This document shows positions 50,966-50,980 of a DNA stretch of 64,000 nucleotides, piece after piece. Under the pieces are notes generated by a model that was not told where the DNA came from, did no database searches, and was given only the letters and a program-made list of their open reading frames with translations. Origin of the DNA: Ostrea edulis (Eukaryota); assembly GCF_947568905.1 (NCBI RefSeq), contig NC_079168.1, positions 33,728,001-33,792,000 on the forward strand, in the 5' to 3' direction. The translations under genes and the position numbers were made by a program. Positions within the stretch are counted from its first letter, which is position 1; every line of letters starts with the position of its first letter.

Positions 50966-50980
50966 GCACAAACAAGATGG
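50966..50980 (+). CDS. InR: Candidate 15-nt cassette microexon after alphaCT, encoding (R)HKQD(G)
   Basis: Long pyrimidine tract with branch-like cctaat, tctag acceptor, perfect gg|gtaagt donor; 15 nt, phase 2-2, no stop. Confidence 0.6.

What the first reader, a model, noticed from the sequence alone, without database searches (positions are those of the whole stretch)
50966..50980. 15-nt microexon directly after alphaCT
Seen: cgtttcttttcctaatgttacaacttctttgttatcacatctag|GCACAAACAAGATGG|gtaagtag has a branch-like motif, long pyrimidine tract and perfect donor, and keeps frame, adding HKQDG. Inference: an IR-B-like extension of the alphaCT tail that standard annotation would tend to miss.
Basis: partly seen in the sequence, partly recalled or inferred. 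Interest (0 to 1): 0.7.

Follow-up and report, generated by a model that had tools for sequence, protein, structure and literature searches.

The report
Real 15-base exon after insulin-receptor alphaCT
This oyster insulin-receptor gene has a genuine, conserved 15-base exon that is spliced into the mRNA and adds five amino acids directly after the hormone-binding alphaCT segment, at the position of the mammalian IR-A/IR-B switch; it is not yet shown to be optional.

Summary
At 50966-50980 (+) the window reads tctag|GCACAAACAAGATGG|gtaagtag.

The segment lies 1.28 kb into the 8.2-kb intron after the alphaCT exon (49472-49685). That exon ends at the residue aligning with human IR R717, where mammalian exon 11 is inserted. 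The 15 nt keep the frame: YLKR-HKQDG-MDSKR.

- **Conservation.** In genomic contigs of two other, mutually divergent oyster lineages the exon and both splice sites are kept, with one change (HKQDR). The longest run identical in all three over 7.5 kb is 33 nt, covering its acceptor and the exon.
- **RNA.** A 4.1-kb spliced contig from one sequencing run reads alphaCT exon, then microexon, then the next exon (57920). A second contig from the same study is consistent with this.

Only the inclusion form was seen, so an IR-A/IR-B-like switch is not shown (my odds about 55%). The peptide has no similarity to mammalian exon 11. Whether public annotation misses the exon could not be tested.

The scan's earlier notes here are all on this same window; none is on other DNA.

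The parts
47844..48014 (+). Upstream constitutive exon (first part of FnIII-2, ...HYEVYWRKRPLVHEKFNERNYCTE); donor gtatgt at 48015
   Evidence: tblastn with bivalve receptors; sequence. The loose ends of RNA contigs lying before 49472 read the last 30 bases of this exon.
49472..49685 (+). alphaCT exon: the Cys triplet region (GECACPK) and the alphaCT segment (MQIAFENFLHNYVYLKR); acceptor tattgcag|CA, donor AAGAG|gtaaat; ends with two bases of the Arg codon
   Evidence: Aligns with human IGF1R 670-704 and IR 640-717. RNA contigs from X1-X4 fix the boundaries. My first guess of an acceptor at 49445 was wrong and out of frame.
50906..50965 (+). 3' splice region of the microexon: branch-like CTAAT (50930-50934), pyrimidine tract, AG at 50964-50965
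   Evidence: Sequence. The -30..-1 flank is 90% identical to L001, against 47-59% for the acceptor flanks of the neighbouring constitutive exons.
50966..50980 (+). 15-nt coding microexon GCACAAACAAGATGG, adding HKQDG (HKQDR in two other oyster lineages)
   Evidence: Present in a spliced 4133-nt contig from run X3 between the alphaCT exon and the 57920 exon (tables 7 and 8). Conserved in L001-L008 and L016. Lies within the longest three-way identical run, 50946-50978.
50981..51010 (+). 5' splice site GTAAGT and conserved downstream intron (...GAAATGAAGCAGATT)
   Evidence: 81% identity to L001 over +1..+30.
57920..58253 (+). Next constitutive exon (MDSKRAEMLFKNN...; basic processing site RKPRAARYSR; start of the beta chain); acceptor ttcttatag|A
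   Evidence: Sequence. The X3 contig continues from the microexon into AATGGATAGTAAAAGA, which is the start of this exon with one synonymous C>T change. Genomic ORFs of related oysters: P0001-P0007.

Best explanation
The 15 nt at 50966-50980 are a genuine coding microexon of an oyster insulin-receptor-family gene.

Shown:
- The spliceosome joins the alphaCT exon (ends 49685) to 50966, and 50980 to the next exon at 57920.
- The receptor therefore reads ...FENFLHNYVYLKR-HKQDG-MDSKR...
- The exon, its acceptor and its GTAAGT donor have been kept almost unchanged in divergent oysters, while the neighbouring coding exons drifted to about 70% identity.
- The intron that holds it lies at the same residue as the intron holding mammalian INSR exon 11.

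Inferred:
- The five residues sit where the alphaCT helix ends. In vertebrate receptors this helix, together with the L1 domain, forms the primary hormone-binding site. The insert would change the length and charge (His, Lys, Asp) of the segment leaving that site. It would thereby tune affinity or selectivity for the several oyster insulin-like peptides, as the 12 residues of IR-B do for IGFs.
- I put about 55% on the exon being a regulated cassette with a skipped form in some tissues or stages, and about 40% on it being constitutive.

The confidence figure below refers to the shown part: a real exon that is used and conserved.
For: -: run X3, record 9 is a 4133-nt contig at depth 84. It aligns to 49475-49686 and its loose end continues CACAAACAAGATGG+AATGGATAGTAAAAGA. 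At its other side it is spliced to the end of the 47844-48014 exon.
- run X4, record 19 (3716 nt) also aligns through 49686. This requires a G after CTCAAGAG, as in the inclusion form; the skipped form would have A.
- intron pieces in X3 have depth 2-4 against 84 for the exon, so the run behaves as RNA.
- L001-L008 and L016 carry TTCTTTGTTATCACATCTAG|GCACAAACAAGATCG|GTAAGT.
- the longest perfectly conserved three-way run in 7.5 kb is 33 nt at 50946-50978. The longest within the coding 57920 exon region is 15.
- the microexon is 93% identical and its upstream flank 90%, against 72% and 69% for the flanking coding exons.
- the alphaCT exon ends at the residue aligning with IR 717 and IGF1R 704.
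- the chance expectation for such a site is about 0.04.
Against: - The RNA evidence comes from one study (two samples) whose library type is only guessed as RNA. It consists of assembled contigs, not raw reads, so it gives no quantities and no tissue information.
- The loose end of the X4 contig was not printed.
- No skipped form was seen, so the isoform-switch part is unsupported.
- There is no UGC motif within 60 nt upstream of the acceptor and no GCAUG near the donor. The hallmarks of the best-known neural microexon regulators are therefore absent.
- The functional effect on ligand binding rests entirely on analogy.
Confidence: 0.88

Rival explanations
1. The microexon is real but constitutive. 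It is always included, it is simply part of the ordinary receptor mRNA, and there is no IR-A/IR-B-like isoform choice.
For: - Both long contigs that cross the site are consistent with inclusion, and none shows skipping.
- The contigs run straight through the site without breaking.
- Both splice sites are strong.
- Very short exons need conserved flanks even when constitutive.
Against: - Contigs drop minor variants and come from one study, so absence of the skipped form means little (notes).
- Flank conservation is far above that of neighbouring constitutive exons.
- The same intron holds a second conserved, frame-preserving cassette (55728-55793) that the same contig skips, so regulated splicing does occur in this intron.
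Confidence: 0.4
2. The site is a chance splice-like motif, or a conserved intronic regulatory element that is not used as an exon. On this view the contig evidence is an assembly artefact or comes from a processed (intron-less) DNA copy.
For: - The library type of X3/X4 is a guess.
- Only one loose end was printed.
- Strong AG...GT pairs do occur by chance.
Against: - The contig is joined at exact exon boundaries on three junctions and continues for kilobases on both sides.
- Exon depth is 84 against 2-4 for the intron in the same run.
- The conservation peak coincides exactly with the AG-to-GT interval.
- The only difference among lineages keeps the frame.
Confidence: 0.04
3. The site is a recursive-splicing landing site used only to remove the 8.2-kb intron in two steps, and is then spliced out again.
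For: A strong acceptor is followed closely by a perfect donor inside a long intron.
Against: - Joining 49685 to 50966 gives AAGAG|GCACAA, which does not rebuild a 5' splice site.
- The 15 nt are retained in an assembled mature transcript.
Confidence: 0.02

Closest known systems
Mammalian INSR exon 11 (IR-B versus IR-A)
   Same: A small in-frame exon in the intron directly after the exon that encodes alphaCT. It adds residues adjacent to the CT peptide of the alpha subunit (PMC3098868; alignment ends at IR 717). From memory, not tested here: the human exon 10 also ends with two bases of the Arg codon (CCCCAG|), which would be the same intron phase.
   Different: 36 nt and 12 residues (KTSSGTGAEDPR, from memory) against 15 nt and 5 residues, with no sequence similarity. 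In mammals the insert lies almost at the alpha-chain C-terminus; in the oyster about 45 residues follow before the processing site. Alternative use is well established in mammals and not shown here. From memory, exon 11 is restricted to mammals, so the two are most likely independent inventions.
C. elegans daf-2 exon 11.5 (DAF-2c), and the truncated DAF-2B
   Same: A cassette exon stated to reside in a position similar to mammalian exon 11 (PMC4876481). This shows that the position has been used for receptor isoforms outside vertebrates.
   Different: Much longer (about 82 residues, from memory). It is neuron-class specific and driven by RBFOX, CELF and PTB through UGCAUG elements in the downstream intron. 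No GCAUG lies near the oyster microexon donor.
Bilaterian microexons (27-30 nt or shorter)
   Same: Very short, a multiple of three, strong splice sites, and unusually conserved flanking intron.
   Different: The usual UGC element just upstream of the acceptor, the SRRM4/eMIC signature (own knowledge), is absent within 60 nt. Tissue pattern is unknown.

Membership tests
Cassette at the insulin-receptor exon-11 position (IR-B-like) | Lies in the intron directly following the alphaCT-coding exon | tested here: met
   The alphaCT exon 49472-49685 ends at the residue aligned with IR 717 and IGF1R 704. The microexon is the next exon in the transcript.
Cassette at the insulin-receptor exon-11 position (IR-B-like) | In-frame insertion present in mature mRNA | tested here: met
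   15 nt; the X3 contig joins 49685-50966 and 50980-57920.
Cassette at the insulin-receptor exon-11 position (IR-B-like) | Both the included and the skipped form are made, with tissue or stage regulation | tested here: inconclusive
   Only inclusion was seen, in contigs of one study. Contigs cannot show absence, and no raw-read run was offered.
Cassette at the insulin-receptor exon-11 position (IR-B-like) | Descent from mammalian exon 11 (sequence homology) | tested here: not met
   HKQDG or HKQDR bears no resemblance to the 12-residue mammalian peptide, and the length differs. The resemblance is positional only.
Cassette at the insulin-receptor exon-11 position (IR-B-like) | Changes ligand affinity or selectivity | not testable with these tools
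Needs binding assays.
Conserved microexon | 30 nt or shorter, frame-preserving, canonical strong splice sites | tested here: met
Conserved microexon | Exon and flanking intron conserved above the intron background across species | tested here: met
   33-nt perfect three-way run. 93%, 90% and 81% identity for the exon and its two flanks, against 47-59% for the acceptor flanks of neighbouring constitutive exons.
SRRM4/eMIC- or RBFOX-regulated neural microexon | UGC motif close upstream of the acceptor, or (U)GCAUG in the downstream intron | tested here: not met
   The nearest TGC is 62 nt upstream (50902-50904). There is no GCATG within 300 nt downstream, nor in the conserved patch 51038-51067.

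The most novel reading that the evidence does not exclude
The intron behind alphaCT is a long-standing site for optional exons in insulin-receptor genes. Oysters keep at least two conserved optional cassettes there: the 15-nt exon and a 54-66-nt Pro/Thr-rich exon at 55728-55793. These would give up to four alpha-tail variants that could match one receptor gene to several insulin-like peptides. This would be a third animal lineage, after mammals and nematodes, to place isoform control at this exact residue.
Probability: 0.3. Interest if true: 0.75.

Novelty: new member of a known kind. Interest (0 to 1): 0.58.

Why it matters
The alphaCT segment is the core of the hormone-binding site in insulin-family receptors. 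The only well-studied way animals vary its surroundings is the mammalian exon-11 switch (IR-A versus IR-B), with daf-2 exon 11.5 as a nematode parallel.

A conserved, expressed microexon at the same residue in oysters shows that this boundary is a recurrent point of receptor diversification. It offers a simple test system, five residues present or absent, for how the exit of alphaCT affects ligand choice in an animal with one main receptor and several insulin-like peptides. These peptides are relevant to oyster growth and reproduction.

If the exon proves constitutive, the finding reduces to a correct gene-model detail.

Tried and rejected
- **Wrong acceptor.** I first placed the alphaCT acceptor at 49445. 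RNA contigs put it at 49472, and 49445 is out of frame.
- **Exon-by-exon protein word searches** returned only genomic ORFs of related oysters and no transcript-derived fragments. They were useful for fetching loci but not for isoforms.
- **Profile-free search with the L1 exon** and a region search with the Sinanodonta receptor did not retrieve any full-length oyster receptor. Annotated isoforms therefore could not be inspected.
- **Other bivalve receptors** (Sinanodonta, Ruditapes, Dreissena, P0164) show unrelated sequence after Y-x-K-R. There is no sign of the exon outside oysters, and no genomic test was possible there.
- **Two scans of metagenome contigs** for the exon with its flanks found nothing.
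- **The closest relative** (L009/L010 and L017) has a contig gap exactly over the microexon. L015 and L023 also stop short of it. P0006 could not be located.
- **Literature searches** for oyster receptor splice forms or the peptide string found nothing.
- **Rejected readings.** Recursive splice site: the junction does not rebuild a donor. Repeat-derived exonisation: the region is unique in the window.

Full report
**Observation**

One search shows tctag|GCACAAACAAGATGG|gtaagtag, with the exon at 50966-50980 on the + strand. Upstream lie a CTAAT branch-like motif (50930-50934) and a pyrimidine-rich tract; the donor is a perfect GTAAGT. The window has no N. The 700 bases around the site are unique in the window.

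**Gene context**

Six-frame reading and tblastn with bivalve receptors show an insulin-receptor-family gene on the + strand. It runs from the L1 exon near 19.8 kb to the transmembrane exon near 63.4 kb.

The exon before the candidate encodes the Cys-triplet region and MQIAFENFLHNYVYLKR. HMMER against solved structures aligns it with human IGF1R 670-704 and IR 640-717. Its last residue falls on the Arg that ends VFVPR or IFVPR.

I first placed its acceptor at 49445. The RNA contigs show it at 49472 (tattgcag|CA), which is also the only in-frame choice after the upstream exon 47844-48014. The exon ends at 49685 with AG, two bases of the Arg codon. The next exon begins at 57920 (ttcttatag|AATGGACAG) and contains the basic processing site RKPRAARYSR.

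With the 15 nt the protein reads YLKR-HKQDG-MDSKR. Without them it would read YLKR-MDSKR. The frame claim is correct.

**Chance**

I scanned for AG after at least 70% pyrimidine, then 3-60 nt, then GTAAGT. This finds one site in the 8.2-kb intron (this one) and one on the whole minus strand of the window. After requiring a frame-keeping open length, about 0.04 such sites are expected per intron. That is suggestive but not decisive on its own.

**Conservation**

Searching the two flanking exons separately, by reference, gave genomic ORFs of related oysters. Their contigs were then fetched.

L001 and L003 span the whole orthologous intron, and L016 spans it from the microexon onward. In L001-L008 (one lineage) and in L016 (another) the sequence is TTCTTTGTTATCACATCTAG|GCACAAACAAGATCG|GTAAGT. 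The single exon difference, G to C at base 14, turns Gly into Arg and keeps the frame.

| Measure | Value |
|---|---|
| Three-way identity over the 7.5 kb from the microexon to the next exon | 30% overall |
| L001 vs L016 identity in the block around the microexon (50820-51440) | about 60% |
| Longest perfectly conserved three-way run | 33 nt at 50946-50978 (acceptor plus exon) |
| Longest such run at the coding 57920 exon | 15 nt |
| Microexon, window vs L001 | 93% |
| Microexon flank -30..-1 | 90% |
| Microexon flank +1..+30 | 81% |
| alphaCT exon, window vs L001 | 72% |
| 57920 exon, window vs L001 | 69% |
| Acceptor flanks of those two exons | 47-59% |

The closest relative has a contig gap exactly over the site (L009/L010 end at 50905; L017 starts near 52676). 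Two pattern scans of metagenome contigs found nothing.

**RNA**

The run search, made with the alphaCT exon, offered two small RNA runs (X1, X2) and two runs guessed to be RNA (X3, X4; one study; a different organism label from the DNA runs that hold the window perfectly).

These were laid on 49330-51200:
- **X3, record 9.** A 4133-nt contig at depth 84. It aligns to 49475-49686 and continues with CACAAACAAGATGG followed by AATGGATAGTAAAAGA. This is the rest of the microexon (its first G coincides with the intron's first G) and then the start of the 57920 exon with a synonymous C>T. On its 5' side the same contig carries the end of the 47844-48014 exon. It extends 2.7 kb and 1.2 kb beyond the alphaCT exon, so it is a mature spliced transcript.
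- **X4, record 19.** A 3716-nt contig that also aligns through 49686. This requires G after CTCAAGAG, as inclusion gives; skipping would give A. Its loose end was not printed.
- **Depth.** Intron pieces in X3 have depth 2-4, so the run behaves as RNA rather than DNA.
- **X1, X2.** Their contigs stop at the GAG repeat near 49594 and say nothing about the junction.

The evidence is contigs from one study. It shows presence, not amount, tissue, or absence of the skipped form.

**Optional or constitutive**

This remains open.

For a regulated cassette:
- Flank conservation is well above that of neighbouring constitutive exons.
- The first 60 nt after the alphaCT donor are also conserved, at 77-78%.
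- The same intron holds a second conserved exon-like element at 55728-55793. Its AG and GT are kept and its length differences are 6 and 12 nt among three lineages. It is followed by a 64-nt stretch at 97% three-way identity. The X3 contig skips it.

For a constitutive exon:
- Only inclusion was seen.
- The contigs run through the site unbroken.
- Both splice sites are strong.
- The usual motifs of neural microexon control are absent: there is no UGC within 60 nt of the acceptor and no GCAUG near the donor.

I put about 55% on regulated and 40% on constitutive.

**Comparison with what is known**

Mammalian exon 11 adds 12 residues adjacent to the CT peptide (PMC3098868; PMC10298329). C. elegans daf-2 exon 11.5 is stated to lie in a similar position (PMC4876481).

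The oyster exon shares the position. From my memory of the human junction CCCCAG|, it also shares the intron phase; this was not tested here. It shares neither sequence nor length with either known exon.

In the oyster the insert is internal. About 45 residues follow before the processing site, so "extension of the tail" is not quite right.

Other bivalve receptors retrieved here have unrelated sequence after Y-x-K-R. The exon may therefore be oyster-specific, although their genomes could not be examined. I found no paper describing splice forms of an oyster insulin receptor.

**Limits**

**Verdict**

This is a real, conserved and expressed microexon at the exon-11-equivalent boundary. It is a new member of a known kind, and its isoform-switch role is plausible but unproven.

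Noticed in passing
window 55728-55793 (flanks 55679-55911): The 66-nt Pro/Thr-rich cassette candidate from another note is conserved in L001 and L016. Its AG and GTGAGT are kept, and its length differs by 6 and 12 nt (66, 60 and 54 nt), which keeps the frame. It is followed by a 64-nt intron stretch at 97% three-way identity. The X3 transcript contig skips it.
   Followed up: partly
window 56143-56190 and 56513-56544: Two further strongly conserved intronic patches. The second contains TGCATG, an RBFOX-type motif, about 750 nt downstream of the 66-nt candidate.
   Followed up: no
window 49684-49745: The alphaCT exon's donor reads AGG|TAA in frame, so a retained intron would stop the protein directly after ...YLKR. 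The first 60 intron bases are 77-78% identical to L001. P0010, a 737-residue bivalve protein, ends four residues after YLKR. This could point to a truncated soluble ectodomain form like C. elegans DAF-2B, or P0010 may just be a partial gene model.
   Followed up: no
window 49357-49437 and 48841-49324: An intronic repeat element just upstream of the alphaCT exon draws many unrelated high-depth contigs in X3 and X4 (depth up to 630). It adjoins a roughly 130-nt tandem repeat with three copies.
   Followed up: no
window 43018-43131 and 43356-43481: Two adjacent exons both match the same FnIII-1 residues of bivalve receptors in tblastn. This is consistent with the duplicated, possibly mutually exclusive exons noted earlier.
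   Followed up: no
window 58227-60288: The 3' end of the 57920 exon and its donor (…ATAGAG|GTATG) are repeated many times downstream (seen). The true donor copy is therefore not certain from sequence alone.
   Followed up: no
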